The notes: generated by a model from the letters alone, not told the origin. A DNA stretch of 64,000 nt from Isurus oxyrinchus (GCA_026770705.1 JANJGN010000071.1:372001-436000); one strand, 5' to 3'; shown: positions 1,165 to 63,816, numbered from the stretch's first letter. A program made the numbers and translations.

Positions 1165-1249
1165 AGGGAGCAGCACAGGAAGAGGTCATTCAGCCCAAGC
1201 AGAGCGTGTGGGCAGTTCCTCCCCAGGCGAGCAGTCGGACAGGTCCTGG
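1165..1249 (+). other. Gene A 85-nt upstream (putative first/5'UTR) exon
   Basis: Conserved block ending TCCTGG|GTAAGT about 450 nt upstream of the leader ATG in every gene copy. Confidence 0.6.
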
Positions 1250-1699
1250 GTAAGTAACGGAACGATTGGAATTCACTTCCACGACCAACACTGTCCTTTG
1301 TTGATGTTGTGACTTTATAAAGACAGATTCCAATGATTGATGCCTTTGAAAGATTTTTACTGATTATTGAATTCTGGGTGTGAGACTCAAGTCTGTTGTA
1401 CAGAACATCTTTCTAGCTCAAGGGATGAGGGAACTGCAGAGACATGAGCTTTGGGATGTCCTGAGATAGTGAAAGGTGCTATAGAAATGCAAATCAATCA
1501 TTGTTTGTCTTACTTAAAGACTTGTAACTCTCTGCAGAGCACCTATCATCCCACAGAGAATCAAATTAGTCTGTGAAGACATTGTCTAAAAGCAGTTCTG
1601 ATCTCTCGAGAGCTGTCGGACAAGAGGTGAGGTCTCATTAACTCCTTTCTCTTTCACAGCTTGAGAGTGAGAAGTGGATGGAATATCTGGGAGTGGACG

Positions 1700-1739
1700 A
1701 TGGTCAGGAAATCTTACTTCCTCCTGTCACTTCTCCAAG
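1700..1739 (+). pseudogene. Gene A signal peptide exon (MVRKSYFLLSLLQ)
   Basis: ATG, hydrophobic leader, phase-1 donor G|GTAAT; five paralogous copies. Confidence 0.85.
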
Positions 1740-2441
1740 GTAATATCATCATCAGCTCGGACAGATTTATGGTTAATATTCTTTGTAAAAGATCATTCTT
1801 ATCTCTTTATCTCTGTAACCTCCTGCAACTCACCCAAACAACTTCCCAGATCTCTGTGTTACTCCAATTCCGGCCTCTTGACCATCCCCCGATTCCCATC
1901 ACTCCAATACTGGCGGCCGGGCCTTCAGCTGCCTGGGGCCTGAGCTCTGGAATTCACTCCCTAAACCTCGGGATGGAGGAGCTCAGAGGGTTTCATTTTA
2001 CTGAGAATCACCACGACCACATCACAGCTGCAGTGAGAATAGACAGAGAGTCCAGCCCTCACACTTCCTGCACAGTTTCACCATAGCAACCACAATATGG
2101 AAATTTAAAAATACTGAAAGTTAAACTGAAGCTCAAACCAGTCAGTGTAGAGAGATGAGATGTTTACACAGTTTCCCTGTGTGTCTTGTAGACACTGTGT
2201 TGGGTGGAAGACTGGCTTCACTAAACAGGGTCCTGAGGACCATGAGCCAATGTAGAATGAACTTGTCCACTCCTGTGTCCAGGATTCTCTTCCCTCCGTT
2301 GTGAAACCTTGGGGAATTCCATGTGTGTCCTGTAGATGGTCCACACTGCAGCCACTGTGCCCCAGTGATGGAGAGGGTGGATATCGAGTCTAGTGGATCT
2401 ACAAACCTTCCAGAGTTAAATATTGACATTTCTCTCCATAT

Positions 2442-2816
2442 TTGGACTGTCACAAGATTGAAAAGGCGACACTTCACGAGAGGTGACAGCGCAGGATGGT
2501 TCGTGTGTACAGATTCCATGTCATTACAGTTACTTATCAAATTTCATAGGGAGATCACGTGTCGGAATCTGCTTGAAAGGAATAGATGGGAACCCACAGC
2601 CGAAATGGTCTATAGCCTTTCATTCCGAAGGTCACAGTCACAGGGATCAAAGATTCCACCATCGGACCCGGCTGTCTGGAGACCTGAAAGATGGCGACTG
2701 TTCCCTGATTATAAACAACATCAGACGGGAAGATGCAGGACCTTATTTTTTCAGAATAGAATTTGACAGCAGGAATAGATACAACTATTATCCTGTAACC
2801 CAGCTTCACGTTTCTG
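2442..2816 (+). pseudogene. Gene A Siglec V-set exon, inactivated
   Basis: Acceptor CCCAG mutated to CATAT; in-frame TGA at 2459-2461 replacing Trp; C-strand Trp replaced by Cys; otherwise collinear with other V exons. Confidence 0.9.
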
Positions 2817-3195
2817 GTAAGTGCTGTGTTATAATTACTCAACAATTCACATTCAACACTCAATGGGAGATAACACAAACTGTGACGTTTACATATTAAC
2901 ACAAAACGCAGCTTATTATAACTTGCTATCTGATTCTCAATAACCTGGTGATAGCTTCCAGTTCAGTCCTAAAGCAACCTCTAATACTCACTTTAATATC
3001 AATGATTAAATGTATTCACTGTGTCCATCAATGTTATCAGGTTATCCACTCCCATTAGTCTACCTAATGCTTTTTAAATGTCTAACAATTTGACAAAAGA
3101 AGGATGTGCATTCCTATAGCGTCTTCCCATTAAGTATAAATTGTGGTTCACTTTCTGTTGGTAATCCTGCGAACGGGCTTCTTGATTCCTGCCCT

Positions 3196-3348
3196 GACAT
3201 CTTAATGTCCAAATGAACAGAACAAGTTCCAACAATGAGCTGTGGTTGGTGATTCCTCCCATTACATATCGGGACACTGGAGACTATCAGTGTGTGGCAG
3301 AGAATGAACATGGAGCAGTGGAGGGGTTCATAACCATCACTGTGGAAC
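3196..3348 (+). pseudogene. 5'-truncated Ig exon remnant (gene A)
   Basis: 3' half of the 282-nt Ig exon (MNRTSSNNELWL...TVE|GTGAGT) without its normal acceptor. Confidence 0.85.
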
Positions 3349-5019: not shown

Positions 5020-5159
5020 ACAGTGGAGGAGAGATTCTGCATGTGATCCTGATCCTGGGAATACGAGCTGTGATATTCCTTGTGGCTGTGGTTATCACTA
5101 TCACTGGAGTCTGTGTCTGGGAGAGACAAACAGTGAAAGGAAGTCGACAGACTGTTTGA
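5020..5159 (+). pseudogene. Gene A activating-type TM/short-tail exon (Arg in TM)
   Basis: CTCTAG acceptor; SGGEILHVILILGIRAVIFLVAVVITITGVCVWERQTVKGSRQTV*. Confidence 0.8.
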
Positions 5160-6594: not shown

Positions 6595-7030
6595 TTGACA
6601 GTGCAGCGTTTCCTCAATCCTGACCCTCGGTCAGTGCAGCGCTCCCTCATTACTGTCCCTCTGACAGTGCTGCACTACCTCATTATTGACCCTTTTCAAG
6701 TGCAGCACCCTGTCAGAACTGACCTTCTGACAGTGCAGCACACCCTCATGGCTGACAATCTGACAGTGCAGCACTCCCTCAGTACTCATCCACCCACAGT
6801 GCAGCACTCCCTCAGTACTGATCCTCTGACACTGTATCCCTCCCTCACTACTGACCTTCCGACAGTTCAGCACTCCCACGGTACACACCTTCTGACAGTG
6901 CAGCACTCCCTCAGTACAGACTCTCTGACAGTGCAGCACTCCCTCAGTACTCACCCTCCCACAGCGCAGCCCTCTCTCAGTACTCACCCTCCCACAGTGC
7001 AGCACTCCCTCAGTACTCACCCTCCCACGG
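6595..7030. repeat. 30-bp minisatellite (ACAGTGCAGCACTCCCTCAGTACTGACCCT-like)
   Basis: Tandem 30-mers (TVQHSLSTDP in translation). Confidence 0.9.
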
Positions 7031-7244
7031 TGCTGTTCGAGTTGATTCAATCAAGACTGGTGCCCAAAGAGGGAGGTTTCAATGCTAAATCATTGAATCG
7101 GTGAAAATTATTTTTAGGCTTACGGGAACAAGACTTAGTTCCTCAAATCCTTTCTTTTGCAATAACACACAGTACAAGAATTCTGTTTAAATAAATTCCA
7201 GTTAAACTTTGCCATGAAAGGATATCTTCTCACACTCGGCTCTA

Positions 7245-7620
7245 CCTCAGTACTAACCCTCCCACAGTCCGGCACCCCCTCAATACTGACCCTCTGACTG
7301 TGCGGAACTCACTCAATACAGACCCGCCGACAGTTCAGCACTCCCACATTACTGACCCTCTGACAGTGCAGCACTCCCTCAGTACTGAACCTCTGACCGT
7401 GCAGCACTCCCTCATTACTGACCCTCTGACAGTGCAGCACTCCCACATTACTGACCCTCTGACAGTGCAGCACGCCCTCACTACTGACCCTCTGACAGTG
7501 CAGCACTCTCCCATTACTGACCCTCTGATAGTGCAGCACTCCCACATTACTGACCCTCCCACAGTGCAGCACTCCCACAGTAGAGTCCCGCTGACAGTGC
7601 AGCACTCCCTCCGTAATGAT
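7245..7620. repeat. 30-bp minisatellite
   Basis: Same unit as 6595-7030. Confidence 0.9.
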
Positions 7621-7892: not shown

Positions 7893-7977
7893 AGGGAGCA
7901 GCACAGGAAGAGGTCATTCAGCCCAAGCAGAGCGTGTGGGCAGTTCCTCCCCAGGCGAGCAGTCGGACAGGTCCTGG
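7893..7977 (+). other. Gene B 85-nt upstream exon
   Basis: Same conserved block with GTAAGT donor. Confidence 0.6.
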
Positions 7978-8427: not shown

Positions 8428-8467
8428 ATGATCGGGAAATCCTACTTCCTCCTGTCACTTCTCGAAG
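8428..8467 (+). CDS. Gene B Siglec-like signal peptide exon (MIGKSYFLLSLLE)
   Basis: ATG, leader, phase-1 donor. Confidence 0.85.
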
Positions 8468-13157: not shown

Positions 13158-13544
13158 TTGGACTGTCACAAGAGTGGAAAGGTGAAACTCCACGAGAGGT
13201 GACAGCGCAGGAAGGTTCGTGTGTACAGATTGCATGTAACTACAGTTATCCAGCACGTGTAGTAGGGAGAGCACGTGTCGGAATCTGGTACGTGAAATGG
13301 TACACATGGAATACATGGAATACAAGGTCTAGAGGGACCATAGCTTTTCACTCCAAGGATCACAATCGCGAGTTAGCACGGTTCCACCATCGGACACGGC
13401 TGTCTGGAGAACTGAAAGATGGCGACTGTTCCCTGATTATAAACAACATCAGACGGGAAGATGCAGGATATTATTATTTCAGAATAGAATTTGACAGCAG
13501 AAATACATACAGCTACTATCCTGCAACCCAGCTTCATGTTTCTG
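13158..13544 (+). CDS. Gene B Siglec V-set exon 1 (divergent C-C' loop)
   Basis: CCCCAG acceptor, G|GTAAGT donor, 387 nt open frame, EGSCVQIAC / GDCSLII / YYFRIE. Confidence 0.9.
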
Positions 13545-32320: not shown

Positions 32321-32360
32321 ATGATCGGTAAATCATACTTCCTCCTGTCACTTCTCCAAG
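32321..32360 (+). CDS. Gene D signal peptide exon (MIGKSYFLLSLLQ)
   Basis: ATG, phase-1 donor. Confidence 0.85.
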
Positions 32361-35791: not shown

Positions 35792-36157
35792 TTGGACTGT
35801 CACAAGAATGGAAAGGTGACACTCCACGAGAGGTGACAGCGCAGGAATGTTTCTGTGTACAGATTCCATGTCATTACAGTTATCCATCACATTTGGAAAA
35901 GCAACCACGAGTTGGAATCTGGTTTAATAATGAGGAATGGAGAACATCGTCTATAGCCTTTCACTCCAAGGATCACAGTCACGAGTTACCACGGTTCCAC
36001 CATCGGACCCGGCTGTCTGGAGACCTGAAAGATGGTGACTGTTCCCTGATTATAAACAACATCAGACAGGAAGATGCAGGACCTTATTTTTTCAGAATAG
36101 AATTTGACAGCAGAAATAAATACAGCTACTATCCTGTAACCCAGCTTCACGTTTCTG
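35792..36157 (+). CDS. Gene D Siglec V-set exon
   Basis: 366 nt open frame; PYFFRIEFDSRNKYSYY resembles the CD33 F-G strands. Confidence 0.9.
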
Positions 36158-37016: not shown

Positions 37017-37314
37017 ATTTCACAGATAAACCCACGATATTCCCTGCTGAAATTATCGCAGGAAAGCGCTGTGGATGTAAGCTGCACCTTCAACACAACG
37101 TGCAATGGAACAGCAGCACCTGTCTTAACCTGGGACACTCCCACTGACGTACCTGGATCAGTCTCAAACACTGTAACTCAGCATGGTGTCACTCTGACCC
37201 ATACTTCTGTTCTGACCCTGATCCCATCACTCAAACACCACGGACACACACTCAGCTGCAGAGTGAGATATCCATCTGTTTCATCGGAGCGGACCCTCAT
37301 ACTAACTGTGCAAC
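37017..37314 (+). pseudogene. Gene D C2-set exon with +1 frameshift
   Basis: 298 nt versus 297 in paralogues; AAGCGCTGTG versus AAGCGTGTG/AAGCCTGTG at ~37069. Confidence 0.8.
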
Positions 37315-37533: not shown

Positions 37534-37626
37534 ATGCACCACAGAATATCTCATTTACTACGCTTGATATGATTAATGTTTCATCGATCAATATAATTGA
37601 GGGGTTCATAACCATCACTGTGGAAT
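37534..37626 (+). CDS. Gene D 93-nt mini-exon (internally deleted Ig exon)
   Basis: APQNISFTTLDMINVSSINIIEG-FITITVE, intact splice sites, phase 1-1. Confidence 0.7.
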
Positions 37627-38313: not shown

Positions 38314-38595
38314 ATGCACCACGGAATCTCTCAATTACTTCTCTTGGTGTGATTAACGCTTTATCGATCGATGTAATTGAGGGGAATTCTGCAGTGATAA
38401 TCTGCTCTGTCGAGAGCTTCCCAGCTTCTAACCTGACGTGGCGACATCTTAATGTCCCAATGAACAGAACAAGTTCAAACAATGAGCTGTGGTTGGTGAT
38501 TCCTCACGTTACATCCAGGGACACTGGAGACTATCAGTGTGTGGCAGAGAATGAACATGGAGCAGTGGAGGGGTTCATAACCATCACTGTGGAAC
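38314..38595 (+). CDS. Gene D tandem Ig (C2/I-set) exon 1
   Basis: 282 nt; VIICSVESFPASNLTW...DTGDYQCVAENEHG. Confidence 0.9.
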
Positions 38596-39256
38596 GTAAG
38601 TTACTGCAAACTTCAACATCACTCACACACACACACACACATACACACACGTGCACACACATACTCATAAACATACACACACATTCACTCATGCACAGAA
38701 ATATACACAAAGACACACTCACATATGCGCAGACACATACACACACGCACACACAGACACATGCGTGCATACTCACACAAACACACTCACTTGTGCAGAA
38801 ACACAAACACAAACACATACACACACATGAGTTCCCTCTCCTCTCTCAGTGCCGCACTGGAGTCTTGGTATCAGCACTGATTCTGTGTTGAAGGAATGTA
38901 AACTCCAGATCAGCAAGACCCTGAATTGGATGGAGCAACCTCCTGAACAGAGAATTGTAGACTTACCCCTCAGTGCTCCATCGATCAAATACAATTCATT
39001 GCCTGTAAATCCCTTGGCAAAATCCTGAGGATGTGAAAGTTTCTTTCATTCTAGGTGGACAGCACCTCTACTGGTGGGAGAATGTAACTGTAGTTTGACT
39101 GTTTACATAGGCAGTGCCCATTATAAATTTGACAGTGGAAGTTATATGGAGGGAAGGTACCCGGAATTGCATACAGACATCAGATACAGAGAGATGATGC
39201 GTGGAGTCTTGCTGTAAATTGAGCTTGCTCACATTAAACACTTGATTTGTTTTTAG

Positions 39257-39538
39257 ATTCACCACAGGATCTCTCATTTACTTCGCTTGAAATGATTAAT
39301 GCTTCATCGATCAATATAATTGAGGGGAATTCTGCAGTGATAATCTGCTCTGTCGAGAGCTTCCCAGCTTCTAACCTGACGTGGCGACATCTTAATGTCC
39401 CAATGAACAGAACAAGTTCCAACAATGAGCTGTGGTTGGTGATTCCTCACCTTACATCCAGGGACACTGGAGACTATCAGTGTGTGGCAGAGAATGAACA
39501 TGGAGCAGTGGAGGGATTCATAACCATCACTGTGGAAT
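39257..39538 (+). CDS. Gene D tandem Ig exon 2
   Basis: 282 nt, intact. Confidence 0.9.
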
Positions 39539-40280
39539 GTGAGTGCACACACACATCTACATCACACACACACACTCACACATGCAAAAACACTCATGTG
39601 TAGACACAAACATGCACGTTTACACACAAACATACGTTCAAACACATACACAGAAACACACACAAACTCAACTCACACGTACAATCATTCATGCGCACAC
39701 GTAGACACACGTATACACACACACTCATTCAAGCACAGATGTACACACAAGACCCACATACACACGCGTGCCCACACATGCGCAGACAGACACGCGCATA
39801 CACACAAATACAAACTCACTTGTGCAGAAATACACACACACACACAAGTGTGAGATCCCTCCCCTCTCTCAGTGCTGCACTGGAGTCTCGGTATCAGCTC
39901 TGATTCTGTGTTGAAGGAAGGTAAACTCCAGATCAGCAAGACCCTGAATTGGATGAGCAACTTCCTGAACGGAGAATTGTAGATTTACTCCTCAGTGCTC
40001 CATCAATCAAATACAATTCACGGGCTTTCAATCCCTTGGGGGCATCTTGAGAGTGTTAAAGGATGTTTGTTTCATTCTAGGTGGACAGCAACTCTGTTGG
40101 TGGGAGAATGCAACTGCAGTGTGACAGTTTACATAGGAAGTGCCCATTATAAATGTGACAGTATTTTTTCCTGAGGGAAGGTACCTGGAAATGCATTCCA
40201 ATATCAGATACAGAGAGATGATGCATGGAGTCTTGCTGTGCACTGTGCTTGCTCACATTAAAATCTTTATTTGTTTTTAG

Positions 40281-40562
40281 ATGCTCCACGGAATCTCTCA
40301 GTTACTTCTCTTGATATGATTAACGCTTCATCGATCAATATAATTGAGGGGAATTCTGCAGTGATAATCTGCTCTGTCGAGAGCTTCCCAGCTTCTAACC
40401 TGACGTGGCGACATCTTAATGTCCCAATGAACAGAACAAGTTCCAACAATGAGCTGTGGTTGGTGATTCCTCACGTTACATCCAGGGACACTGGAGACTA
40501 TCAGTGTGTGACAGAGAATGAACATGGAGCAGTGGAGGGATTTATAACCATCTCTGTGGAAC
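40281..40562 (+). CDS. Gene D tandem Ig exon 3
   Basis: 282 nt, intact. Confidence 0.9.
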
Positions 40563-41826: not shown

Positions 41827-41923
41827 GGCGAGATTCCAATGAATGGAAAGCAGGATTGCTTGGAGCTGGAATCTGTTTGAGTGTTGGACTGAGTGGATTC
41901 TTCATCTTCAAGTGTGTGAGAAA
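41827..41923 (+). CDS. Gene D transmembrane exon
   Basis: RDSNEWKAGLLGAGICLSVGLSGFFIFKCVRK|GTAAGT; 97-nt paralogue of 20528-20624. Confidence 0.85.
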
Positions 41924-42631: not shown

Positions 42632-42716
42632 AGGGAGCAGCACAGGAAGAGGTCATTCAGCCCAAGCAGAGCGTGTGGGCAGTTCCTCCCCAGGCGAGCA
42701 GTCGGACAGGTCCTGG
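42632..42716 (+). CDS. Gene D putative cytoplasmic exon 1 (copy of the 85-nt upstream exon)
   Basis: CAG acceptor, GTAAGT donor, phase 2-0, open frame GSSTGRGHSAQAERVGSSSPGEQSDRSW. Confidence 0.55.
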
Positions 42717-43226: not shown

Positions 43227-43331
43227 AAGAGAGGCGAGGGGAAAGCAGGAATCAAATCGAACCACCGTGTTGATGAATATCGAGGTCCTGTTTATGAAAA
43301 CTGTGAGCGTGGTTGGGCTTTGAGGAATCAG
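43227..43331 (+). CDS. Gene D putative cytoplasmic exon 2 (VYENC)
   Basis: TTACAG|KRGEGKAGIKSNHRVDEYRGPVYENCERGWALRNQ|GTGAGT, phase 0-0. Confidence 0.55.
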
Positions 43332-47695: not shown

Positions 47696-47780
47696 AGGGA
47701 GCAGCACAGGAAGAGGTCATTCTGCCCAAGCAGAGCATGTGGGCAGTTCCTCCCCAGGCGAGCAGTCGGACAGGTCCTGG
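47696..47780 (+). other. Gene E 85-nt upstream exon
   Basis: Conserved block, ETS site at 47641. Confidence 0.6.
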
Positions 47781-48230
47781 GTAAGTAACGGAACGATTGG
47801 AATTCACTTCCACCACCAACACCGTCCTTTGTTGATGTTGTGACTTTATAAAGACAGATTCCAATGATTGATGCCTTTGAAAGATTTCTACTGATTATTG
47901 AGATCTGGGTGTGAGGCTCAAGTCTGTTGTACAGAACATCTTTCTAGCTCAAGGGATGAGGGAAGAGCAGGGACATGAGCTTTGGGACATCCTGAGGTGG
48001 TGAAAGGTGCTATGGAAATGCAAGTCCTTCAATGTTTTTCTTTCTTAAAGCCTTGTAACTCTCTGCAGAGCACCTATCATCCCACAGAGAATCAAATTAG
48101 TCTGTGAAGACATTGTGTAAAAGCAGTTCTGATCTCTCGAGAGCTGTCGGACAAGAGGTGAGGTCTCATTAACTCCTGTCTCTTTCACAGCTTGAGAGTG
48201 AGAAGTGGATGGAATATCTGGGAGTGGACG

Positions 48231-48270
48231 ATGGTCGGGAAATCTTACTTTCTCTTGTCACTTCTCCAAG
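48231..48270 (+). CDS. Gene E signal peptide exon (MVGKSYFLLSLLQ)
   Basis: ACGATGG Kozak context, phase-1 donor. Confidence 0.88.
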
Positions 48271-48973: not shown

Positions 48974-49342
48974 TTGGACTGTCACAAGAGTGGAAAGGTG
49001 ACACTCCACGAGAGGTTGCAGCACAGGAAGGCTCGTGTGTACAGATTCCATGTCATTACAGTTATCCATCGTGTCTGGAAAACCAACCGCGAGGTGGAGT
49101 CTGGTTTAATAATGAGAAACAGATTCCCTGGGCTCCCATTGCCTTTCACTCCAAGGATCACAGTCACGAGTTACCACGGTTCCACCATCGGACCCGGCTG
49201 TCTGGAGACCTGAAAGATGGCGACTGTTCCCTGATTATAAACAACATCAGACGGGAAGATGCAGGACCTTATTTTTTCAGAATAGAATTTGACAATGGTC
49301 CGAGCCATAACTATTACCCTGTAACCCAGCTTCTCGTTTCTG
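48974..49342 (+). CDS. Gene E Siglec V-set exon
   Basis: 369 nt, intact, essential Arg present. Confidence 0.92.
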
Positions 49343-50201: not shown

Positions 50202-50498
50202 ATTTCACAGATAAACCCACGATTTTCCCTGCTGAAATTATTGCAGGAAAGCCTGTGGATGTAAGCTGCACCTTCAACACAATGTGCAATGGAACAGCAG
50301 CACCTGTCTTAACCTGGGACACTCCCACTGACGTACCTGGATCAGTCTCAAACACTGTAACTCAGCATGGTGTCACTCTGACCTATACTTCTGTTCTGAC
50401 CCTGACCCCATCACTCAAACACCACGGACACACTCTCAGCTGCAGAGTGAGATATCCATCTGTTTCATCGGAGCGGACCCTCGTACTAACTGTGCAAG
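50202..50498 (+). CDS. Gene E C2-set exon
   Basis: 297 nt intact, G|GTTAGT donor. Confidence 0.9.
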
Positions 50499-50821: not shown

Positions 50822-50974
50822 GACATCTTAATGTCCAAATGAATAGAACAAGTTCCAACAATGAGCTGTGGTTGGTGATTCCTCACGTTACATCCAGGGA
50901 CACTGGAGACTATCAGTGTGTGGCAGAAAATGAACATGGAGCAGTGGAGGGGTTCATAACCGTCACTGTGGAAC
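50822..50974 (+). pseudogene. 5'-truncated Ig exon remnant (gene E intron)
   Basis: Same breakpoint as 3196-3348. Confidence 0.8.
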
Positions 50975-52646: not shown

Positions 52647-52786
52647 ACAGTGGAGGAGAGATTCTGCACGTGATCCTGATCCTGGGAATACGAGCTGTGA
52701 TATTCCTTGTGGCTGTGGTTATCACTATCGCTGGAGTCTGTGTCTGGGAGAGACAAACAGTGAAAGGAAGTCGACAGACTGTTTGA
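52647..52786 (+). CDS. Gene E activating-type TM and short tail exon (Arg in TM)
   Basis: SGGEILHVILILGIRAVIFLVAVVITIAGVCVWERQTVKGSRQTV*; phase 1, joins C2 in frame. Confidence 0.85.
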
Positions 52787-52894
52787 AGCTTTGTACAGCA
52801 ACAATCTGGTCAGTCAGTGCGGACAAATAACGTGTGATGTTGGGTTAAGTGTAATGAAACTGGTCAGTGTCCTGGTTAGAATCACCTTCGTATC

Positions 52895-53510
52895 AGAGAG
52901 GCATTCCAGCACAGTGGGAGCCCATTCAGCCCATTGAGTCCATGCTGTCTCTCTGTAGAGCAATCCAGTCAGTCCCATTCCCCTGCTCTATCCCCGTATC
53001 CCTGTGAGTTTATTTCCCCTCAAGTGTCCATCCAATTTCCTTTTGAAATCGTTCATCGTCTCCACATCCACCATCCTCGTAGGCAGCGAGTTCCAGCTCA
53101 TTACCACTCGCTGTGTAAAAAAGTTCCTCCTCACATCAACCCCTGTCCAAATCCTTCAATCTGTGTCCCCCAGTCCTTGTACCATCAGCTAATGGCAACA
53201 GCTTCTCTTTGTCTACCTGATCTAAACCCATCATCATCTTGTACACCTCGATCAGATCCCCCCTCAATCTCCTTTGCTCCAAGGAGAACAACCCCAGCTT
53301 CTCCAACCCAACCTTGTAGCTAAAATCCCTCATCCCTGGACCCATTCTGCTCAATCTCCTCCCCACCCTCTCAAGGACCCTCACTTCCTTCCCAAAGTGA
53401 GGAGACCAGAACTGGACACAATACTCTAGTTGTGACCTAACCAGAGCTTTATAAATGTTCAGCATAACCTCCCTGTGTTTGTACTCAATTCCTCGATTTA
53501 TGAAAAGCTT
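52895..53510 (-). mobile_element. CR1 LINE 3' fragment (duplicate of 5270-5880)
   Basis: ORF 53136-53555. Confidence 0.9.
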
Positions 53511-54219
53511 ATTCTTTCCATCAGCACAAACAGCAATTTCCAAGCGGACTCCCATCAGCAGACAGAGTGCAATGAAACATCGGCATGCCTGCTTCTTAAT
53601 GTACGGAGAGAAACCTGCAACGAGAGATTCTCCTTCTTCTCCTCAGCAAGCTGAAACTTTTCCTTATACCTGGTGCTCCCCAGTCCTGCTGTGTGGACAC
53701 ATCATAACCACGGCATTGTCTGGCTGTGTGCAGCCAACATGGTCGAATAGAAATGAACAGAAATGTGACGTTGCTAAACTCTGTTCTCTGATTGGAATGT
53801 GCTTTCTGAATGCTGCACCTTTTTCATGCTGCGATAGATTGTAAGAAGCATTTGGGTTATGAATAAAATTACATTGATTAACACAAGTGATTAAAATGCT
53901 CAGGCTGTTCTGTAGATATTTATAGATTAAAATACTTATTTTGCTGCCAAATTCTTGCCTCAAAGAAAAGCTTCTTGTTGTCACATTTTCTCTATTATAT
54001 AAATTCCTGTGCCCATCCTTATAATAGAAATTTCCAATGTAAACATGTCACATTGTAGTTTCACACTCCTGCCAGTAGTGGTGCCATTCCAAAGCTGTCC
54101 TGCTGCACAGACACAGTGAGAAATATTCTCGATGTGTACATGATGTTGTTGTTACACAGACATCAGGCGGAACCTTGGGCAGTGCCTAGAATGCACTTAG
54201 GACAGTGCAGACCATGCTC

Positions 54220-56205
54220 AGAACTGACAGTGCAGCGTTTCCTCAGTGCTGACCCTCCGTCAGTGCAGCGCTCCCTCATTACTGTCTCTCTGACAGTGCT
54301 GCACTACCTCATTATTGACCCTTTTCAAGTGCTTCACCCCGTCAGCATTGACCTTCTGACCGTGCAGGATTCCCTCATGGCTGACACTCTGACAGTGCAA
54401 CACTCCCTGAATACTGACCCTCTGATACTGTACCCCTCCATCACTAATGACTTTCCAACAGTTCAGCACTCCCTCGGTACAGACCCTCTGACAGGGCAGC
54501 ATTCCCTCAGTATTCAAACTCCCACTATGCAGCTGTCCCTCAGTATTCTCACCCCCACAGTGCAGCACTCCCTCAGTACTCTCCCTCCCACAGTGCAGTA
54601 CTCCCTCAGTACTCACCCTCCCACAGTGCAGCACTCCCTCAGTACTCACCCTCCCACAGTGCAGCACTCCCTCAGTACTCACCCTCCCACAGTGCAGTAC
54701 TCCCTCAGTACTCACCCTCCCACAGTGCAGCACTCCCTCAGTTCTCTCACTCCCACAGTGCAGCACTCCCTCAGTTCTCTCACTCCCACAGTGCAGCACT
54801 CCCTCAGTACTCACCCTCCCACAGTGCAGCACACCCTCAGTACTCACCCACCCACAGTGCAGCACTCCCTCAGTACTCACCCACCCACAGTGCAGCACTC
54901 CCTCAGTACTCACCCTCCCACAGTGCAGCACTCCCTCAGTTCTCTCACTCCCACAGTGCAGCACTCCCTCAGTTCTCTCACTCCCACAGTGCAGTACTCC
55001 CTCAGTACTCACCCTCCCACAGTGCAGCACTCCCTCAGTACTCACCCTCCCACAGTGCAGCACTCCCTCAGTACTCACCCTCCCACAGTGCAGCACTCCC
55101 TCAGTACTCACCCTCCCACAGTGCAGCACTCCCTCAGTACTCACCCTCCCACAGTGCAGAACTCCATCAGTACTCACCCTCCCACAGTGCAGCACTCCCT
55201 CAGTACTCATCCTCCCAAAGTGCAGCACTCCCTCAGTACTCACCCTCCCACAGTGCAGCACTCCCTCAGTACTCACCCTCCCACAGTGCAGCACACCCTC
55301 AGTACTCACCCTCCCCCAGTGCAGCACTCCCTCAGTACTCACCCTCCCACAGTGCAGTACTCCCTCAGTACTCACCCTCCCACAGTGCAGCACACCCTCA
55401 GTACTCACCCTCCCACAGTGCTGTGTGAGTTGTTTCAATCAAGACTGGTGCACAAAGAGGGAGGTTTCATTGCTAAATCATTGAACTCGGTGAAAATTAT
55501 TTTTAGGCTTACGGGAACAAGAATTAGTTCGTCATATCCTTTCTTTAGCAATAACACACAGTACTAGAATCTCTGTTTAAATAAATTCCAGTTAAACTTT
55601 GCCATGAAAGGATATCTTCTCACACTCCGCTCTACCTCAGTACTAACCCTCCCACAGTCCGGCACCCCCTCAATACTGACCCTCCAACTGTGCGGAACTC
55701 ACTCAGTGCAGACCCGCCGACAGTGCAGCACTCCCTCATTACTGACCCTCCGACATTGCAGCATTCCTTCACTACTGGCCCTCTGACAGTGCAGCACTCC
55801 CACATTACTGACCCTCTGATAGTGCAGCAGACCCTCAGTACTGACCCCACTAACAGTGCAGCACTCGCTCAGTACTGACCCTCCCACAGTGCAGCACTCT
55901 CTCAGTACTACACTCCTGACAGTGAAGCACTCCCTTATTAATGACCCTCTTCCAGTGCAGAACTCCCACATTACTGACACTCTGACAGTGCAGCACTCCC
56001 ACATTACTGTCCCTCTGACAGTGCAGCACTCCCTCAGTACTGACCCTCCGACATTGCAGCAATCCTTCACTACTGGCCCTCTGACAGTGCAGCAATCCCA
56101 CATTACTGACCTTCTGATAGTGCAGCACTCACTCAGTACTGACCCTCACACAGTGCAGCACTCCCTCAGTACTATACCCCTGACAGTGCAGCACTCCTTC
56201 AGTAA
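54220..56205. repeat. 30-bp minisatellite arrays (expanded)
   Basis: CACAGTGCAGCACTCCCTCAGTACTCACCCTCC-type units; much longer than the paralogous 6.6-7.6 kb arrays. Confidence 0.95.
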
Positions 56206-56481
56206 TGATATCAGGGATTGTCAACATGTATCATACGGCCAGAGACCTGTATTGGGAACTCTATCGCCTGCACTTCAGCCTCTGAGATGAGGGGGAGGGG
56301 TCTAATCCCACGGAGCCAATGGAGAAGCTTGAAGACTACAGCTGCCCAAATATGAGCTGACAGATCACACATGGTAAACGTTTTGCTGAGAGCACAAAAC
56401 ATCCTCGAACTTCTCACTGATTACCCACTTCCTCATTTTGTCTCACAGTGACACATCCACCCTTTCTATTTAAACACACAG

Positions 56482-56566
56482 AGGGAGCAGCACAGGAAAA
56501 GGTCATTCAGCCCAAGCAGAGTGTGTGGGCAGTTCCTCCCCAGGCGAGCAGTCGGACAGGTCCTGG
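56482..56566 (+). other. Gene F 85-nt upstream exon
   Basis: Conserved block, ETS site at 56427. Confidence 0.6.
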
Positions 56567-57016: not shown

Positions 57017-57056
57017 ATGATCGGGAAATCTTACTTCCTCCTGTCACTTCTCCAAG
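57017..57056 (+). CDS. Gene F signal peptide exon
   Basis: MIGKSYFLLSLLQ G|GTAAT. Confidence 0.88.
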
Positions 57057-57917: not shown

Positions 57918-58286
57918 TTGGACTGTCACAAGAGTGGAAAGGTGACACTCCACGAGATGTGACAGCGCAGGAAGGTTCATGTGTACAGATTCCATGTCAT
58001 TACAGTTATCCAGCACATTTGGAAAACCAACCGCGAGGTGGAGTCTGGTTTAATAATGAGAAACAGATTCCCTGGGCTCCCATTGCCTTTCACTCCAAGG
58101 ATCACAGTCACGAGTTACCACGGTTCCGCCATCGGACCCGGCTGTCTGGAGACCTGAAAGATGACGACTGTTCCCTGATTATTAACAACATCAGACGGGA
58201 AGATGCAGGACCTTATTTTTTCAGAATACAATTTGACAATGGTCTGAGCCATAACTATTACCCTGTAACCCGGCTTCATGTTTCTG
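57918..58286 (+). CDS. Gene F Siglec V-set exon
   Basis: 369 nt intact; PYFFRIQ. Confidence 0.92.
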
Positions 58287-59144: not shown

Positions 59145-59441
59145 ATTTCACAGATAAACCCACGATATTCCCTGCTGAAATTATTGCAGGAAAGCGTGTG
59201 GATGTAAGCTGCACCTTCAACACAACGTGCAATGGAACAGCAGCACCTGTCTTAACCTGGGACACTCCCACTGACGTACCTGGATCAGTCTCAAACACTG
59301 TAACTCAGCATGGTGTCACTCTGACCTATACTTCTGTTCTGACCCTCATCCCATCACTCAAACACCACGGACACACACTCAGCTGCAGAGTGAGATATCC
59401 ATCTGTTTCATCGGAGCGGACCCTCATACTAACTGTGCAAG
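59145..59441 (+). CDS. Gene F C2-set exon
   Basis: 297 nt intact. Confidence 0.92.
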
Positions 59442-59660: not shown

Positions 59661-59753
59661 ATGCACCACAGAATCTCTCATTTACTTCGCTTGATATGAT
59701 TAATGCTTCATCGATCAATATAATTGAGGGGTTCATAACCATCACTGTGGAAT
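59661..59753 (+). CDS. Gene F 93-nt mini-exon
   Basis: APQNLSFTSLDMINASSINIIEG-FITITVE, splice sites intact. Confidence 0.7.
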
Positions 59754-60443
59754 GTGAGTTAATNNNNNNNNNNNNNNNNNNNNNNNNNNNNNNNNNNNNN
59801 NNNNNNNNNNNNNNNNNNNNNNNNNNNNNNNNNNNNNNNNNNNNNNNNNNNNNNNNNNNNNNNNNNNNNNNNNNNNNNNNNNNNNNNNNNNNNNNNNNNN
59901 NNNNNNNNNNNNNNNNNNNNNNNNNNNNNNNNNNNNNNNNNNNNNACACAGATCCTTATTTTACAGAAACATACACACACAAGCCAACACACACATACAC
60001 ACACAAAAACATGTGGGTTCCTTCTCCTCTCCCAGTGCTGCACTGGAGTCTCAGTATCAGCTCCGAATCTGTGTTGATGAAAGGTAAACTCCAGATCATC
60101 AAGACACTGAACTGCATGGAGCAACCTCCTGAACAGTGAATTGTAGATTTACCCCTCAGTGCTCCATCGATCAAATACAATTCATTGCCTTTGAAGCCCT
60201 TGCGGACATCCTGAGGATCTGAAAGGGAGTTTCCTGCATTCTAGATGGACACCTCCACTGGTGGGAGAATGTAACTGCAGTGTGACAGTTTACATAGGCA
60301 GTGCCCGTTGTAAATGTGAAATAAGTTCTTATCCTGAGGGAATGTACCTGGAAATGCATTCAGACATCAGATACAGAGACATGATGCATGGAGTCTTACT
60401 GTGCACTATATTTGCTCATATTAAAATCTTTCTGTGTTTATAG

Positions 60444-60725
60444 ATGCACCACGGAATCTCTCAATTACTTCTCTTGGTGTGATTAACGCTTTATCGATTG
60501 ATGTAATTGAGGGGAATTCTGCAGTGATAATCTGCTCTGTCGAGAGCTTCCCAGCTTCTAACCTGACGTGGCGACATCTTAATGTCCCAATGAACAGAAC
60601 AAGTTCCAACAATGAGCTGTGGTTGGTGATTCCTCACGTGACATCCAGGGACACTGGAGACTATCAGTGTGTGGCAGAGAATGAACATGGAGCAGTGGAG
60701 GGGTTCATAACCATCACTGTGGAAT
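60444..60725 (+). CDS. Gene F tandem Ig exon 1
   Basis: 282 nt intact. Confidence 0.9.
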
Positions 60726-60748
60726 GTGAGTTACTGCAAACTTCAACA

Positions 60749-60786
<38 letters not shown>

Positions 60787-61384
60787 ACACACATACTCAT
60801 AAACATACACACACATTCACTCATGCACAGAAATATACACAAAGACACACTCACATATGCGCAAACACACACACACGCACACACAGACGCATGCGTGCAT
60901 ACTCACACAAACACACTCACTTGTGCAGAAACACAAACACAAACACATACACACACATGAGGTCCCTCTCCTCTCTCAGTGCCGCACTGGAGTCTTGGTA
61001 TCAGCTCTGATTCTGTGTTGAAGGAAGGTAAACTCCAGATCAGCAAGACCCTGAATTGGATGAGCAACTTCCTGAACAGAGAATTGTAGATTTACTCCTC
61101 AGTACTCCATCGATCAAATACAATTCATTCCCGTAAATCCCTTGGCAAAATCCTGAGGATGTGAAAGTTTCTTTCATTCTAGGTGAACAGCACCTCTACT
61201 GGTGGGAGAATGTAACTGCAGTTTGACTGTTTACATAGGCAGTGTCCATTATAAATTTGACAGTGGAAGTTATAAGGAGGGAAGGTACCCGGAATTGCAT
61301 ACAGACATCAGTTACAGAGAGATGATGCATGGAGTCTTGCTGTAAATTGAGCTTGCTCACATTAAACACTTGATTTGTTTTTAG

Positions 61385-61666
61385 ATGCACCACAGGATCT
61401 CACATTTACTTCGCTTGAAATGATTAATGCTTCATCGATCAATATAATTGAGGGGAATTCTGCAGTGATAATCTGCTCTGTCGAGAGCTTCCCATCTTCT
61501 AACCTGACGTGGCGACATCTTAATGTCCCAATGAACAGAACAAGTTCCAACAATGAGCTGTGGTTGGTGATTCCTCACGTTACATCCAGGGACACTGGAG
61601 ACTATCTGTGTGTGGCAGAGAATGAACATGGAGCAGTGGAGGGATTCATAACCATCACTGTGGAAT
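61385..61666 (+). CDS. Gene F tandem Ig exon 2
   Basis: 282 nt intact. Confidence 0.9.
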
Positions 61667-62413
61667 GTGAGTGCACACAGACTTCAACATCACACACACA
61701 AACACAGACACACATGCAAAAACACTCATGTGTAGACACAAACATGCACGCTTACACACAAACATACGTTCAAACACATACACAGAAACACACACAAACT
61801 CAACTCACACGTACAATCATTCATGCGCACACGTAGACACACGTATACACACACACTCACTCAAGCACAGATATACACACAAGACCCACATACACACGCG
61901 TGCCCACACATGCGCAGACAAACACGCGCATACACACAAATACAAACTCACTTGTGCAGAAATACACACACACACACAAGTGTGAGCTCCCTCTCCTCTC
62001 TCAGTGCTGCACTGGAGTCTTGGTATCAGCTCTGATTCTGTGTTGAAGGAAGGTAAACTCCAGATCAGCAAGACCCTGAATTGGATGGAGCAACCTCCTG
62101 AACAGTGAATTGTAGATTTACCCCTCAGTGCTCCATCGATCAAATACAATTCACGGGCTTTCAATCCCTTGGGGGCATCTTGAGAGTGTTAAAGGATGTT
62201 TGTTTCATTCTAGGTGGACAGCAACTCTGCTGGTGGGAGAATGCAACTGCAGTGTGACAGTTTACATAGGAAGTGCCCATTATAAATGTGACAGTATTTT
62301 TTCCTGAGGGAAGGTACCTGGAAATGCATTCCAACATCAGATACAGAGAGATGATGCATGGAGTCTTGCTGTGCATGCTGCTTGCTCACATTAAAATCTT
62401 TATTTGTTTTTAG

Positions 62414-62695
62414 ATGCCCCACAGAATCTCTCAATTACTTCTCTTGATATGATTAACGCTTCATCGATCAATATAATTGAGGAGAATTCTGCAGTGATAA
62501 TCTGCTCTGTCGAGAGCTTCCCAGCTTCTAACCTGACGTGGCGACATCTTAATGTCCCAATGAACAGAACAAGTTCCAACAATGAGCTGTGGTTGGTGAT
62601 TCCTCACGTTACATCCAGGGACACTGGAGACTATCAGTGTGTGGCAGAGAATGAACATGGAGCAGTGGAGGGGTTCATAACCATCACTGTGGAAT
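62414..62695 (+). CDS. Gene F tandem Ig exon 3
   Basis: 282 nt intact. Confidence 0.9.
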
Positions 62696-63534
62696 GTGAG
62701 TTAACGNNNNNNNNNNNNNNNNNNNNNNNNNNNNNNNNNNNNNNNNNNNNNNNNNNNNNNNNNNNNNNNNNNNNNNNNNNNNNNNNNNNNNNNNNNNNNN
62801 NNNNNNNNNNNNNNNNNNNNNNNNNNNNNNNNNNNNNNNNNNNNNCACATTTACACACACAGTCATACACGTGCAAAAACATACACAGAAACACACATAC
62901 ACTCAACTCACACGCACACACTCACACAGGCACACATATAGACATACACATGCACTCACGTTCACTCATGCACAGACGTATACACAAAGACACACAAACA
63001 TATGCAAAACACATACACACACGCACACACAGACACATGCGTGCATACACACACAAACACACTCACTTGTGCAGAAACACAAACACACACATACGCACGC
63101 ATGAGGTCCCTCTCCTCTCTCAGGGCTGCACTGGAGTCTTGGTATCAGCTCCGATTCTGTCTTGAAGGAAGGTAAACTCCAGATCAACAAGATCCTGAAT
63201 TGGATGGAGCAACCTTCTGAACAGAGAATTGTAGGTTTGCCCCTCAGAGCTCCATCGATCAAATGCAATTCATTGCCTGTCAAGCCCTTGGCAAAATCCT
63301 GAGGATGTGCAAGGAAGTTTCTTTCATTCTAGGTGGACAGCGCCTCTACTGGTGGGAGAATGTAACTGTAGTTTGACTGTTTACATAGGCAGTGCCCATT
63401 ATAAATTTGACAGTGGAAGTTATATGGAGGGAAGGTATCTGGAAATGCATACAGACATCAGATACAGAGAGATGATGCATGGAGTCTTGCTGTGCACGCT
63501 GCTTGCTCACATTAAAATCTTTATTTGTTTTTAG

Positions 63535-63816
63535 ATGCTCCACAGAATCTCTCAATTAATTCTCTTGATATGATTAATGCTTCATCGATCAATATAATTG
63601 AGCGGAATTCTGCAGAGATAATCTGCTCTGTCGAGAGCTTCCCAGCTTCTAACCTGACGTGGCGACATCTTAATGTCCCAATGAACAGAACAGGTTCCAA
63701 CAATGAGCTGTGGTTGGTGATTCCTCACGTTACATCCAGGGACACTGGAGACTATCAGTGTGTGGCAGAGAATGAACATGGAGCAGTGGAGGGGTTCCTA
63801 ACCATCACTGTGGAAC
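63535..63816 (+). CDS. Gene F tandem Ig exon 4 (gene continues beyond window)
   Basis: 282 nt open frame, TTAG acceptor, C|GTGAGT donor. Confidence 0.88.

What the first reader, a model, noticed from the sequence alone, without database searches (positions are those of the whole stretch)
1165..63816. Tandem cluster of Siglec-like receptors with both activating and inhibitory forms (paired-receptor system)
Seen: six V exons with Siglec hallmarks (extra Cys in EGSCVQIPC, E-strand Cys in GDCSLII, F-strand Arg in FFRIE, A-strand Trp), CD33-like C2 exons carrying a partner Cys (CTFNTTC), and three different C-terminal modules: Arg-TM with a short tail (A, E), neutral TM with YANP/TEYAQI (B), and neutral TM with YEN/YAN/SVYGNL (D). 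Established: rapidly evolving clusters with paired activating and inhibitory members are known for mammalian CD33-related Siglecs (Siglec-5/14, Siglec-11/16). Inference: this is an independently expanded or ancient equivalent in a probable cartilaginous fish. I cannot say whether it has already been described.
Basis: partly seen in the sequence, partly recalled or inferred. Interest (0 to 1): 0.9.

Follow-up and report, generated by a model that had tools for sequence, protein, structure and literature searches.

The report
Shark Siglec gene cluster, activating and inhibitory
This stretch of a shark genome holds five tandem genes for Siglec-type (sialic-acid-lectin-like) immune receptors, including an expressed "activating" form and "inhibitory-type" forms with almost the same outer domains, a design known from mammals but said in the literature to be missing from fish.

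Summary
All features lie on the + strand. There are five leader exons and six Siglec-type V exons, so five genes, with gene B carrying two V exons.

- **E** is intact: V, C2, then a transmembrane exon with a buried Arg and a 13-residue tail. Spliced contigs from four runs (recorded only as probable RNA) confirm every intron.
- **A** is a dead copy of E. Its V exon has lost the splice acceptor, has TGA in place of the A-strand Trp, and the C2 exon is deleted.
- **B** is V-V-C2, an assembly gap, a neutral TM and a tail. Its proximal motif LLYANP no longer fits the ITIM consensus; only TEYAQI remains.
- **D** has a different YxN/SVYGNL tail, but a 1-nt insertion frameshifts its C2 exon.
- **F** runs off the window.

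All four N runs are intronic, though the gap in B could hide exons.

V-domain sequence and fold match Siglecs first. The nearest proteins are automatic RefSeq "Siglec/CD33-like/MAG-like" models from about 20 shark and ray species. In trees the family is an elasmobranch-only clade.

E and B2 share 96% of V residues and 93% of C2 residues, which fits a paired-receptor design. Sialic-acid binding and adaptor coupling are inferred, not shown. Other notes of this scan report similar genes elsewhere in the same genome. Verdict: a new member of a known kind, of moderate interest.

The parts
1165..1249 (+). Gene A: upstream 85-nt block, homologous to the 5'UTR exon of gene E
   Evidence: 95-98% identical block upstream of all five genes. 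Coordinates.
1700..1739 (+). Gene A leader exon (MVRKSYFLLSLLQ, donor GTAATA, phase 1)
2442..2816 (+). Gene A V exon, broken: acceptor AT instead of AG, and TGA in place of the A-strand Trp
3198..3347 (+). Gene A: 3' half of a C2b (I-set-like) exon without an acceptor; a remnant
5020..5159 (+). Gene A terminal exon: TM with a buried Arg, 13-residue tail, stop
8428..8467 (+). Gene B leader exon
13158..13544 (+). Gene B first V exon (B1), with a Trp-rich, extended C-C' loop
   Evidence: V1 of the Cetorhinus V-V model P0002 has the same loop.
16833..17201 (+). Gene B second V exon (B2). It begins 'AEPSQEW', as internal V domains of multi-V shark models do
17926..18222 (+). Gene B C2a exon (C2-set, CTFNTTC)
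18390..18868 (.). Two N runs, with 31 read bases between them, in B's intron between C2a and TM; may hide exons
20528..20624 (+). Gene B TM exon (neutral TM; ends in phase 2)
21601..21682 (+). Gene B cytoplasmic exon 2
23113..23361 (+). Gene B terminal exon: LLYANP, TEYAQI, stop. A possible internal donor AG|GT lies near 23343-23346
24514..24595 (+). Tandem duplicate of B cytoplasmic exon 2
25877..26125 (+). Tandem duplicate of B terminal exon (LLYANP, TEYAQI, stop)
32321..32360 (+). Gene D leader exon
35792..36157 (+). Gene D V exon ('ECFC' variant; Arg kept)
37017..37314 (+). Gene D C2a exon with a 1-nt insertion (C, about 37069), giving a frameshift and a stop
37534..37626 (+). Gene D 93-nt mini-exon: a C2b exon with an internal in-frame deletion
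38314..40562 (+). Gene D: three C2b exons (38314-38595, 39257-39538, 40281-40562), phase 1-1
41827..41923 (+). Gene D TM exon (neutral)
42632..42716 (+). Gene D cytoplasmic exon 2: the 85-nt block also found upstream of every gene
   Evidence: Loose ends.
43227..43331 (+). Gene D cytoplasmic exon 3 (VYENC)
   Evidence: Cetorhinus P0177
43797..43913 (+). Gene D terminal exon (LYANC, SVYGNL, stop)
47696..47780 (+). Gene E 5'UTR exon (its 5' limit is not determined), spliced to the leader exon
   Evidence: Joint 47780>48191 in three runs
48191..48270 (+). Gene E leader exon (ATG at 48231)
48974..49342 (+). Gene E V exon
   Evidence: Joints 48270>48974 and 49342>50202. Fold.
50202..50498 (+). Gene E C2a exon (CTFNTMC)
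   Evidence: Joints in all four runs; CD33 domain-2 alignment
50824..50973 (+). Gene E half-C2b remnant, skipped by the C2a>TM splice
52647..52786 (+). Gene E terminal exon: TM with a buried Arg (..LILGIRAVIF..), 13-residue tail, stop
   Evidence: Joint 50498>52647 in all four runs.
57017..57056 (+). Gene F leader exon
57918..58286 (+). Gene F V exon ('FFRIQ' variant)
59145..59441 (+). Gene F C2a exon
59661..59753 (+). Gene F mini-exon, followed by the intronic gap 59764-59945
60444..63816 (+). Gene F: four C2b exons (60444-60725, 61385-61666, 62414-62695, 63535-63816). Intronic gap at 62707-62845. The gene runs off the window.

Best explanation
The window holds part of an elasmobranch-specific, birth-and-death multigene cluster of Siglec-family receptors in a lamniform-type shark. 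There are five head-to-tail genes built from phase-1 Ig exons that can be shuffled freely.

**Lectin domain.** The N-terminal V domains have the full Siglec signature: the F-strand Arg, a B-E intrasheet Cys pair, and a spare Cys paired with a C2-domain Cys. They most likely bind sialylated glycans through the Arg (inferred). Specificity is probably tuned by the hypervariable C-C' and F-G loops.

**Three output modules.** The same kind of ectodomain is wired to three different C-termini.
1. A transmembrane helix with a buried Arg and almost no tail (E is intact and expressed; A is dead). It would need an ITAM adaptor of the DAP12/FcR-gamma type to signal, so it is activating (inferred).
2. A neutral TM with a tail of the ancient MAG/CD33 type (gene B). 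Other sharks carry a true ITIM (LLYANI/LLYASI) plus TEYAQI. Here and in great white shark only TEYAQI, an ITSM or ITIM-like motif, still fits. Output is therefore probably inhibitory or switch-like, through SH2 phosphatases (inferred).
3. A neutral TM with a tail of YxN motifs ending in SVYGNL, which fits both ITIM and Grb2 consensus (gene D, probably F).

**Pairing.** E and B have near-identical V and C2 domains but opposite modules. That is the definition of a paired receptor.

**Origin.** The cluster arose by unequal crossing-over. E combines an F/D-like 5' half with an A-like 3' half.
For: **Shown**
- Exon maps with canonical splice sites and compatible phases.
- GT..AG joints for all four introns of E. 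V>C2a and C2a>TM are seen in four runs from four studies; the 5'UTR and leader joints are seen in fewer runs.
- The V exon is closest to Siglecs by sequence and by predicted fold (pLDDT 79.5; Foldseek top hits sialoadhesin, Siglec-7, CD33, Siglec-8, MAG, Siglec-10 and Siglec-5).
- The Arg aligns with the YFFRVE motif of Siglec-5.
- C2a aligns with CD33 domain 2, including C-x5-C.
- E and B2 share 96% of V residues, with dN/dS 0.23, and 93% of C2a residues.
- Variation is concentrated in the BC/C-C' region (27 of 36 columns) and the F-G loop, against 10 of 48 columns in the framework.
- All three tail types recur in many shark species.
- In great white shark models an Arg-TM form is 91% identical over 300 ectodomain residues to a long-tail form.
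- The segmental mosaic is visible in self-comparison.
- The family forms an elasmobranch-only clade.

**Lead only, not tested here**
- Another note of this scan reports an FcR-gamma-like adaptor gene in the same genome.
Against: - No binding or signalling data exist.
- In this species B's proximal motif is LLYANP, with Pro at +3, so it is not an ITIM.
- D's C2a exon is frameshifted as assembled. The insertion is not in a homopolymer, so it is probably real.
- A is dead, and F's tail is outside the window. Within the window only one inhibitory-type gene (B) is intact as far as it can be read, and it is interrupted by a gap.
- The runs used are only guessed to be RNA. They are contigs, and close paralogs (95%) can map on E.
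- Whether B uses both V exons in one transcript rests on gene models from other species.
- Tree anchors are automatically named models, not curated Siglecs. Deep branches are weak (79-86).
Confidence: 0.75

Rival explanations
1. The genes are Siglec-derived by descent but no longer act as sialic-acid lectins. The V domains would recognise other ligands (proteins, or pathogen decoys), and the Arg would be kept for structural or other reasons.
For: - The ligand-facing loops are hypervariable and differ by insertions between copies.
- Some copies alter neighbouring motif residues: F has FFRIQ, D has ECFC.
- PILR, a protein-plus-sialic-acid receptor, comes right after the Siglecs among fold matches.
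Against: - The Arg is invariant in all six exons and in eight aligned shark sequences.
- The A-strand Trp is kept in every intact copy, along with the Siglec-specific Cys pattern.
- V-exon dN/dS of 0.2-0.7 indicates constraint.
- In mammals, loss of binding usually goes with loss of the Arg (established knowledge of Siglec-6, Siglec-11 and Siglec-12).
Confidence: 0.12
2. In this species the cluster is mostly decaying. Only the activating gene E, and perhaps B, works, so there is no functional activating/inhibitory pairing here. The 'inhibitory' members are relics or have switched to other signalling.
For: - A is dead.
- D is frameshifted.
- B has lost the ITIM consensus in both tail copies, as in great white shark.
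- A and E carry a dead half-exon.
Against: - B's exons are all open with good splice sites.
- TEYAQI is conserved across sharks.
- Loose ends in the contigs show D-type tail splicing (TM>85-nt exon>cyt3) and a C2a>'YKPE' C2 splice typical of B-type genes, so such transcripts exist in this organism.
- All Ig exons are phase 1-1, so D could skip its damaged exon in frame.
- Other family members lie elsewhere in the genome, according to leads from this scan.
Confidence: 0.15
3. Part of the apparent gene number is an assembly artefact: haplotypes or collapsed and expanded repeats placed in tandem.
For: - There are four assembly gaps.
- The roughly 1-kb C2b units are 81-97% alike.
- Large blocks are repeated: A~E and D~F.
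Against: - The duplicates differ by 3-14% and by structure: a 1.1-kb deletion, different V-exon lineages, and different 3' halves. That is far beyond allelic difference.
- RefSeq assemblies of many other sharks carry comparable multi-copy families.
Confidence: 0.05

Closest known systems
Human Siglec-5 / Siglec-14 (and Siglec-11/-16): CD33-related paired receptors
   Same: - The architecture is the same: a V-set domain with the canonical Arg, a C2 domain with an interdomain Cys, then a TM.
- One partner has a Tyr-motif tail. The other has a basic TM residue and a short tail.
- The ectodomains are near-identical.
- The genes sit in tandem in a fast-evolving cluster with pseudogenes.
   Different: - This family is a separate, elasmobranch-only clade.
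- The E/B2 similarity (97% nt in the exon, dS 0.08, against about 10% divergence in the flanking intron) needs no gene conversion.
- B carries two V exons.
- B's proximal ITIM is degenerate here.
- A third tail type (YxN...SVYGNL) exists.
- Adaptor use is untested.
Siglec-12 (Siglec-XII), the mammalian Siglec with two V-set domains
   Same: Tandem V-set domains in one receptor. This is why NCBI names many shark models 'Siglec-12'.
   Different: Shark models carry 2-4 V domains, each with the Arg. An unchecked note of this scan reports up to seven elsewhere in this genome. No orthology is shown.
MAG/SMP (Siglec-4) and holostean 'CD33-like' genes
   Same: The tail plan 'x-Y-A-x-I-[DN]-F ... [TQ]-x-Y-A-[EQ]-I' is shared with the shark SMP-like protein and with Amia CD33-like. 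V and C2 domains score MAG almost as high as CD33-related Siglecs.
   Different: A distinct SMP/MAG-like gene exists in sharks (P0149) and falls outside this clade. This family is multi-copy and variable, and it has activating members.
[quoted passage not shown]
   Same: They share the same exons at 88-98% identity, the same three tail types and the same Arg-TM exon.
   Different: They are unreviewed predictions with inconsistent names. I found no paper that describes them as a paired system.

Membership tests
Siglec family (I-type lectins) | N-terminal V-set Ig domain most similar to known Siglec V domains | tested here: met
   - PDB phmmer: Siglec-5/7/8, MAG, CD33, Siglec-10, sialoadhesin and Siglec-15 rank first.
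- Pfam V-set and Ig_CD22 are above cut-off.
- Foldseek top ~40 hits are all Siglecs.
Siglec family (I-type lectins) | Canonical sialic-acid-contacting Arg on strand F | tested here: met
   YFFRIE aligns with YFFRVE of Siglec-5 and YFFRME of Siglec-7. The Arg is invariant in all six exons and in alignment A2.
Siglec family (I-type lectins) | Intrasheet B-E disulfide instead of the usual B-F pair, plus a spare B-strand Cys paired with a C2-domain Cys | tested here: met
   - By alignment only.
- C21/C26 and C84 are present, and there is no F-strand Cys.
- The C2a C-x5-C aligns with the CD33 domain-2 C-x5-C.
- Disulfide geometry was not measured.
Siglec family (I-type lectins) | Arg-dependent binding of sialylated glycans | not testable with these tools
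   Needs recombinant protein and glycan arrays.
CD33-related Siglec subgroup | Membrane-proximal ITIM plus membrane-distal ITIM-like motif in the inhibitory members | tested here: inconclusive
   - The family in other sharks has LLYANI/LLYASI plus TEYAQI.
- In the window's gene B the proximal motif is LLYANP, which does not fit the consensus.
- The same tail plan also occurs in shark SMP/MAG-like and Amia genes, so it does not discriminate.
CD33-related Siglec subgroup | Common descent with the tetrapod CD33-related clade, to the exclusion of MAG, CD22, sialoadhesin and Siglec-15 | tested here: inconclusive
   - The elasmobranch clade (99*) groups weakly (79-86) with a set that holds the tetrapod clade, the Amia clade and the shark SMP-like protein.
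- No curated human anchor sequences could be fetched.
- Synteny cannot be seen from this window.
CD33-related Siglec subgroup | Tandem, rapidly evolving, species-specific cluster with pseudogenes and exon shuffling | tested here: met
   - Five genes lie in 64 kb.
- One is a clear pseudogene and one is frameshifted.
- The duplications are mosaic.
Paired activating/inhibitory receptors | Neighbouring genes with near-identical ectodomains but opposite signalling modules (charged TM with a short tail, against a Tyr-motif tail) | tested here: met
   - E against B2: 96% V and 93% C2a identity.
- E has the Arg-TM, and B has a neutral TM plus TEYAQI.
- The same pairing is seen in great white shark models.
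Paired activating/inhibitory receptors | Physical coupling of the charged-TM member to an ITAM adaptor, and of the Tyr tail to SH2 phosphatases | not testable with these tools
There is only an unchecked lead to an FcR-gamma-like gene elsewhere in the genome.

The most novel reading that the evidence does not exclude
Sharks and rays have a complete, functioning counterpart of the mammalian CD33-related Siglec system. It would comprise sialic-acid-binding V domains (often in tandem arrays), adaptor-coupled activating members and phosphatase-coupled inhibitory members that track each other's ectodomains, plus a third Grb2/ITIM tail. Paired Siglec immunoregulation would then either date back to the first jawed vertebrates or have evolved twice. 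Either way this contradicts the published view that fish genomes lack CD33-related Siglecs.
Probability: 0.45. Interest if true: 0.65.

Novelty: new member of a known kind. Interest (0 to 1): 0.5.

Why it matters
The open literature I could search states that fish have only Siglec-1, CD22, MAG and Siglec-15, and that they lack the inhibitory CD33-related group (PMC7226832, which deals with teleosts). This window, together with the RefSeq models of about 20 elasmobranchs, shows a large, fast-evolving Siglec family in cartilaginous fish. It has the same activating/inhibitory design as mammalian paired Siglecs. That gives a concrete, expressed gene pair (E and B) for asking whether 'self-sialic-acid' checkpoints and their pathogen-driven activating decoys are as old as jawed vertebrates or arose convergently. 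It also flags that automatic names such as 'Siglec-8/10/12/13/14' in sharks do not denote orthology. The practical value is mainly for comparative immunology and for annotating shark genomes.

Tried and rejected
1. **Joined model not used.** All searches were exon by exon by reference, so no full-length homology or TM/signal-peptide predictor result is given.
2. **No mammalian anchors from the word-indexed search.** The search for homologous proteins with a shark V domain returned only elasmobranch proteins. The trees therefore rest on automatically named models, labelled through three cluster look-ups. The careful tree and the AU test were not run.
3. **Literature.** Six searches found no paper on shark Siglec clusters. 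One search was badly designed and uninformative. Subscription journals are not covered.
4. **Gene conversion between B2 and E rejected as unnecessary.** The exon differs by 3.3% with dS 0.078, and the flanking intron by about 10%. Simple duplication plus purifying selection is enough.
5. **Assembly duplication considered and rejected.** The copies diverge by 3-14% and differ in structure.
6. **Pfam on TM and cytoplasmic exons** gave nothing. One search failed on a frame slip and was corrected.
8. **The gap in gene B was not filled or looked up.** I report only that a C2a-like exon is joined in some contigs to an exon beginning YKPEISQQSE. That exon is absent from the read letters of the window.

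Full report
**1. What is in the window**

Self-comparison and protein-guided mapping resolve the region into five head-to-tail genes. Each gene starts with a leader exon of the form M..KSYFLLSLL(Q/E) with donor GTAATA in phase 1. The leaders begin at 1700 (A), 8428 (B), 32321 (D), 48231 (E) and 57017 (F).

There are six V exons, because gene B has two (13158-13544 and 16833-17201). All Ig exons are phase 1-1 with canonical splice sites. They can therefore be added, lost or skipped without breaking the frame.

No spliced (joined) protein was given to any search or fold tool. All searches were exon by exon by reference.

**2. Gaps**

None of the four N runs touches an exon or a reading frame.

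- **18390-18577 and 18609-18868** lie in B's intron, 168 nt after the C2a donor (18222) and about 1.66 kb before the TM acceptor (20528). The left flank is collinear with D and F. The right flank has no paralogous counterpart. Continuity is therefore unknown, and one or more exons may be hidden.
- **59764-59945** begins 10 nt after F's mini-exon donor. Both flanks are collinear with D, where the interval is 178 nt.
- **62707-62845** begins 11 nt after a C2b donor, inside the CA-rich intron repeat, again with collinear flanks.

**3. Gene by gene**

*Gene E* is intact. Its parts are:
- a 5'UTR exon ending at 47780;
- the leader exon, 48191-48270;
- the V exon, 48974-49342;
- the C2a exon, 50202-50498;
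- a terminal exon, 52647-52786, which encodes a TM helix with a buried Arg (..LILGIRAVIF..), a 13-residue tail and a stop.

Contigs from four small runs in four studies are recorded only as 'RNA?'. Each run holds 70-155 million letters, far too little to cover a shark genome as DNA. They carry GT..AG joints at the predicted borders:
- 47780>48191, seen in three runs;
- 48270>48974, seen in one run;
- 49342>50202, seen in all four runs;
- 50498>52647, seen in all four runs.

E is thus expressed and spliced as V-C2-TM(Arg). It skips the dead half-C2b remnant at 50824-50973.

*Gene A* is a pseudogene of the E type.
- Its V-exon acceptor is AT.
- The A-strand Trp codon is TGA.
- A 1.1-kb deletion relative to E removed C2a.
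- Its Arg-TM exon (5020-5159) is still open.

*Gene B* has, in order:
- the leader;
- V1, which has a Trp-rich, extended C-C' loop;
- V2;
- C2a;
- the gap;
- a neutral TM exon (20528-20624);
- a juxtamembrane exon (21601-21682);
- a terminal exon (23113-23361).

The terminal exon encodes LLYANP, then TEYAQI, then a stop. The last two exons are tandemly duplicated (24514-24595 and 25877-26125).

V2 starts with 'AEPSQEW', which is the linker seen at internal V domains of multi-V shark models. A basking shark model (P0002) is V1-like, then V2-like, then TM, then the same tail. So B most likely encodes a V-V receptor; this is inferred. A great white shark model (P0168) reads through both tail copies. 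The window has a phase-compatible AG|GT inside the first terminal exon, so a doubled tail is possible; this too is inferred.

*Gene D* has, in order:
- a V exon;
- C2a;
- a 93-nt mini-exon, which is a C2b exon with an internal in-frame deletion and is shared with F;
- three C2b exons;
- a neutral TM exon;
- four cytoplasmic exons carrying VYENC, LYANC and a C-terminal SVYGNL.

Its C2a exon has a 1-nt insertion (C, about 37069) that gives a frameshift and a stop. The context is not a homopolymer, so I think the insertion is more likely real than an error. D is then either a pseudogene or must skip that exon.

*Gene F* has a V exon, C2a, the mini-exon and at least four C2b exons. It then leaves the window.

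**4. Are they Siglecs?**

- **Sequence.** A V exon searched against PDB sequences finds Siglec-5, -7 and -8, MAG, CD33, Siglec-10 and sialoadhesin at E 1e-15 to 3e-12, and Siglec-15 at 2e-8. The best non-Siglec, pIgR, is at 7e-8. The alignment puts YFFRIE on the YFFRVE/YFFRME motif of Siglec-5 and Siglec-7, which carries the essential Arg. It also reproduces the two B-strand Cys and the E-strand Cys, with no F-strand Cys.
- **Fold.** An AlphaFold model of E's V exon (pLDDT 79.5) retrieves only Siglec V domains in roughly the first 40 Foldseek ranks.
- **C2 domain.** C2a matches CD33 domain 2, Siglec-10, MAG and Siglec-5. Its C-x5-C lies on the CD33 C-x5-C that contains the interdomain Cys.
- **Membrane-proximal domains.** The C2b exons are generic I-set domains; MAG and Siglec-8 membrane-proximal domains are among many hits.

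The structural membership tests for the Siglec family are therefore met. Binding itself cannot be tested here.

**5. Relatives and placement**

The exhaustive HMMER search found 1,413 relatives, 32 of them below 1e-30. The closest are Gnomon models from sharks and rays, named 'Siglec-8/10/12/13/14', 'CD33-like' or 'MAG-like'. The genera include Scyliorhinus, Mustelus, Cetorhinus, Carcharodon, Chiloscyllium, Hemiscyllium, Rhincodon, Stegostoma, Heterodontus, Pristiophorus, Heptranchias, Pristis, Mobula, Hypanus, Hemitrygon and Rhinoraja.

Great white shark models are 88-98% identical exon by exon, never 100%. The window therefore comes from a closely related shark, or from paralogues of those models.

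Many models have 2-4 tandem V domains.

In V-domain trees all window copies fall in an elasmobranch-only clade (97-99% support). The B2/E/F subtype clusters with basking shark and catshark sequences (97%). The tetrapod CD33-related clade (amphibians, reptiles, mammals), an Amia clade and a shark SMP/MAG-like gene are separate neighbours, joined only weakly at 79-86%.

The tail plan is 'Y-A-x-I-[ND]-F ... x-Y-A-[EQ]-I'. It is shared with shark SMP-like and Amia CD33-like proteins. It is therefore ancient and does not discriminate subgroups.

My reading is a lineage-specific expansion within the MAG/CD33-related part of the family. Orthology to mammalian CD33-related Siglecs is unresolved.

**6. 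Paired-receptor logic**

- E (Arg-TM) and B2 (long tail) differ at 5 of 122 V residues, with dN/dS 0.23 and dS 0.078. Their C2a exons are 93% identical.
- The exon is more conserved than its flanks: 96.7% in the exon, about 90% downstream, and no homology further upstream. The synonymous divergence is close to the intron divergence, so gene conversion need not be invoked.
- Among the five intact V exons, variable columns concentrate in the BC/C-C' region (27 of 36) and the F-G loop, against 10 of 48 in the framework. This is the pattern expected for ligand-facing diversification.
- The three C-terminal modules are conserved across sharks. The Arg-TM exon occurs in Scyliorhinus torazame, Chiloscyllium and Carcharodon. 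The ITIM+TEYAQI tail and the YxN...[SV]-[VI]-Y-[GA]-N-[VIL] tail occur in many species.
- A great white shark Arg-TM model is 91% identical over 300 ectodomain residues to a long-tail model.

In this window, and in great white shark, B's proximal motif is LLYANP. It does not fit the ITIM consensus, whereas other sharks have LLYANI, LLYASI or LLYINV.

**7. History**

The cluster is a mosaic.
- E's 5' half (48335-50530) is 95% identical to F's.
- E's 3' half (50748-54662) is 94.6% identical to A's.
- D and F share 95-97% from the V exon through the C2b array.
- A's V exon belongs to a different lineage from E's (84% in the exon), although its upstream flank is 97% E-like.
- The half-C2b remnant has the same breakpoint in A and E. 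It therefore predates their duplication.

This is typical birth-and-death evolution by unequal crossing-over.

**8. Further observations from the contigs**

- A contig that matches E's C2a continues into an exon beginning YKPEISQQSE. That is the extra C2 domain of the great white shark V-V-C2a-C2-TM model P0163. The exon is not among the read letters of the window.
- Loose ends at 47696 and 47780 match the end of a D-type TM exon and the start of D's cytoplasmic exon 3. The 85-nt block is therefore used both as a 5'UTR exon (in E) and as a coding cytoplasmic exon (D-type tails).

**9. Known or new**

The only relevant paper I found states that fish regularly have four Siglecs and that fish genomes lack CD33-related Siglecs (PMC7226832; it concerns teleosts). 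The whale shark genome paper merely lists Siglecs among gene families that arose in jawed vertebrates (PMC8455134). I found no description of shark Siglec clusters or of paired forms.

Automatic annotation, however, already names these genes as Siglecs in many elasmobranchs. Other notes of this scan report similar genes elsewhere in this genome; I treat these as leads, not as evidence.

**10. Verdict**

This is a real Siglec-family cluster with activating-type and inhibitory-type members in a shark. Lectin activity and signalling partners remain inferred. I class it as a new member of a known kind, of moderate interest.

Noticed in passing
window 47696-47780 and 42632-42716 (also 1165-1249, about 7893-7977, 31803-31887, about 56482-56566): One 85-nt exon inside a ~300-bp block that is 95-98% identical across copies sits upstream of all five genes and also inside gene D. 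In the contigs it is spliced to E's leader exon as a 5'UTR exon (joint 47780>48191). Loose ends show the same sequence flanked by a D-type TM exon end and by D's cytoplasmic exon 3, so it also serves as a coding exon.
   Followed up: partly
window 50497 (loose end in run X15): A C2a-like exon is joined in some contigs to an exon beginning YKPEISQQSE. This is the extra C2 domain of great white shark model P0163. That exon is absent from the read letters of the window. Gene B's assembly gap lies exactly where it would be expected. The gap was not filled.
   Followed up: no
window 23113-23361 and 24514-26125: The last two exons of gene B are tandemly duplicated in a 2.9-kb unit that is 86-90% identical. 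A great white shark gene model (P0168) reads through both copies, doubling the YA(S/N)P...TEYAQI tail. The window has a phase-compatible internal AG|GT in the first terminal exon.
   Followed up: partly
window 37534-37626 and 59661-59753: A 93-nt mini-exon in D and F is a C2b Ig exon with an internal in-frame deletion (..IIEG|FITITVE). It keeps good splice sites and would encode a 31-residue linker if used.
   Followed up: partly
window 1-1015, 45251-45555, 46409-47531: 43-nt satellite arrays (with higher-order periods of 87, 130 and 255 nt) lie just upstream of genes A and E.
   Followed up: no
window 6596-7619, 54226-56208; inverted copies at 22733-22970 and 25598-25730: 33-nt minisatellite arrays lie downstream of A and E. 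Short arrays of the reverse complement sit in gene B's duplicated tail introns.
   Followed up: no
window 13765-14196: A reverse-transcriptase fragment (Pfam RVT_1, E 2e-8) lies in the intron between B's two V exons. Further retroelement-like ORFs at 27.7-31.4 kb gave no Pfam match.
   Followed up: partly
joint 50975>47696 ('goes back') in run X19: A contig joins the end of a C2b-type exon directly to the 85-nt exon. By paralogy this would be a transcript that skips the TM exon, with incompatible phases. It could be a soluble or truncated isoform of a D/F-type gene, or a mapping artefact.
   Followed up: no
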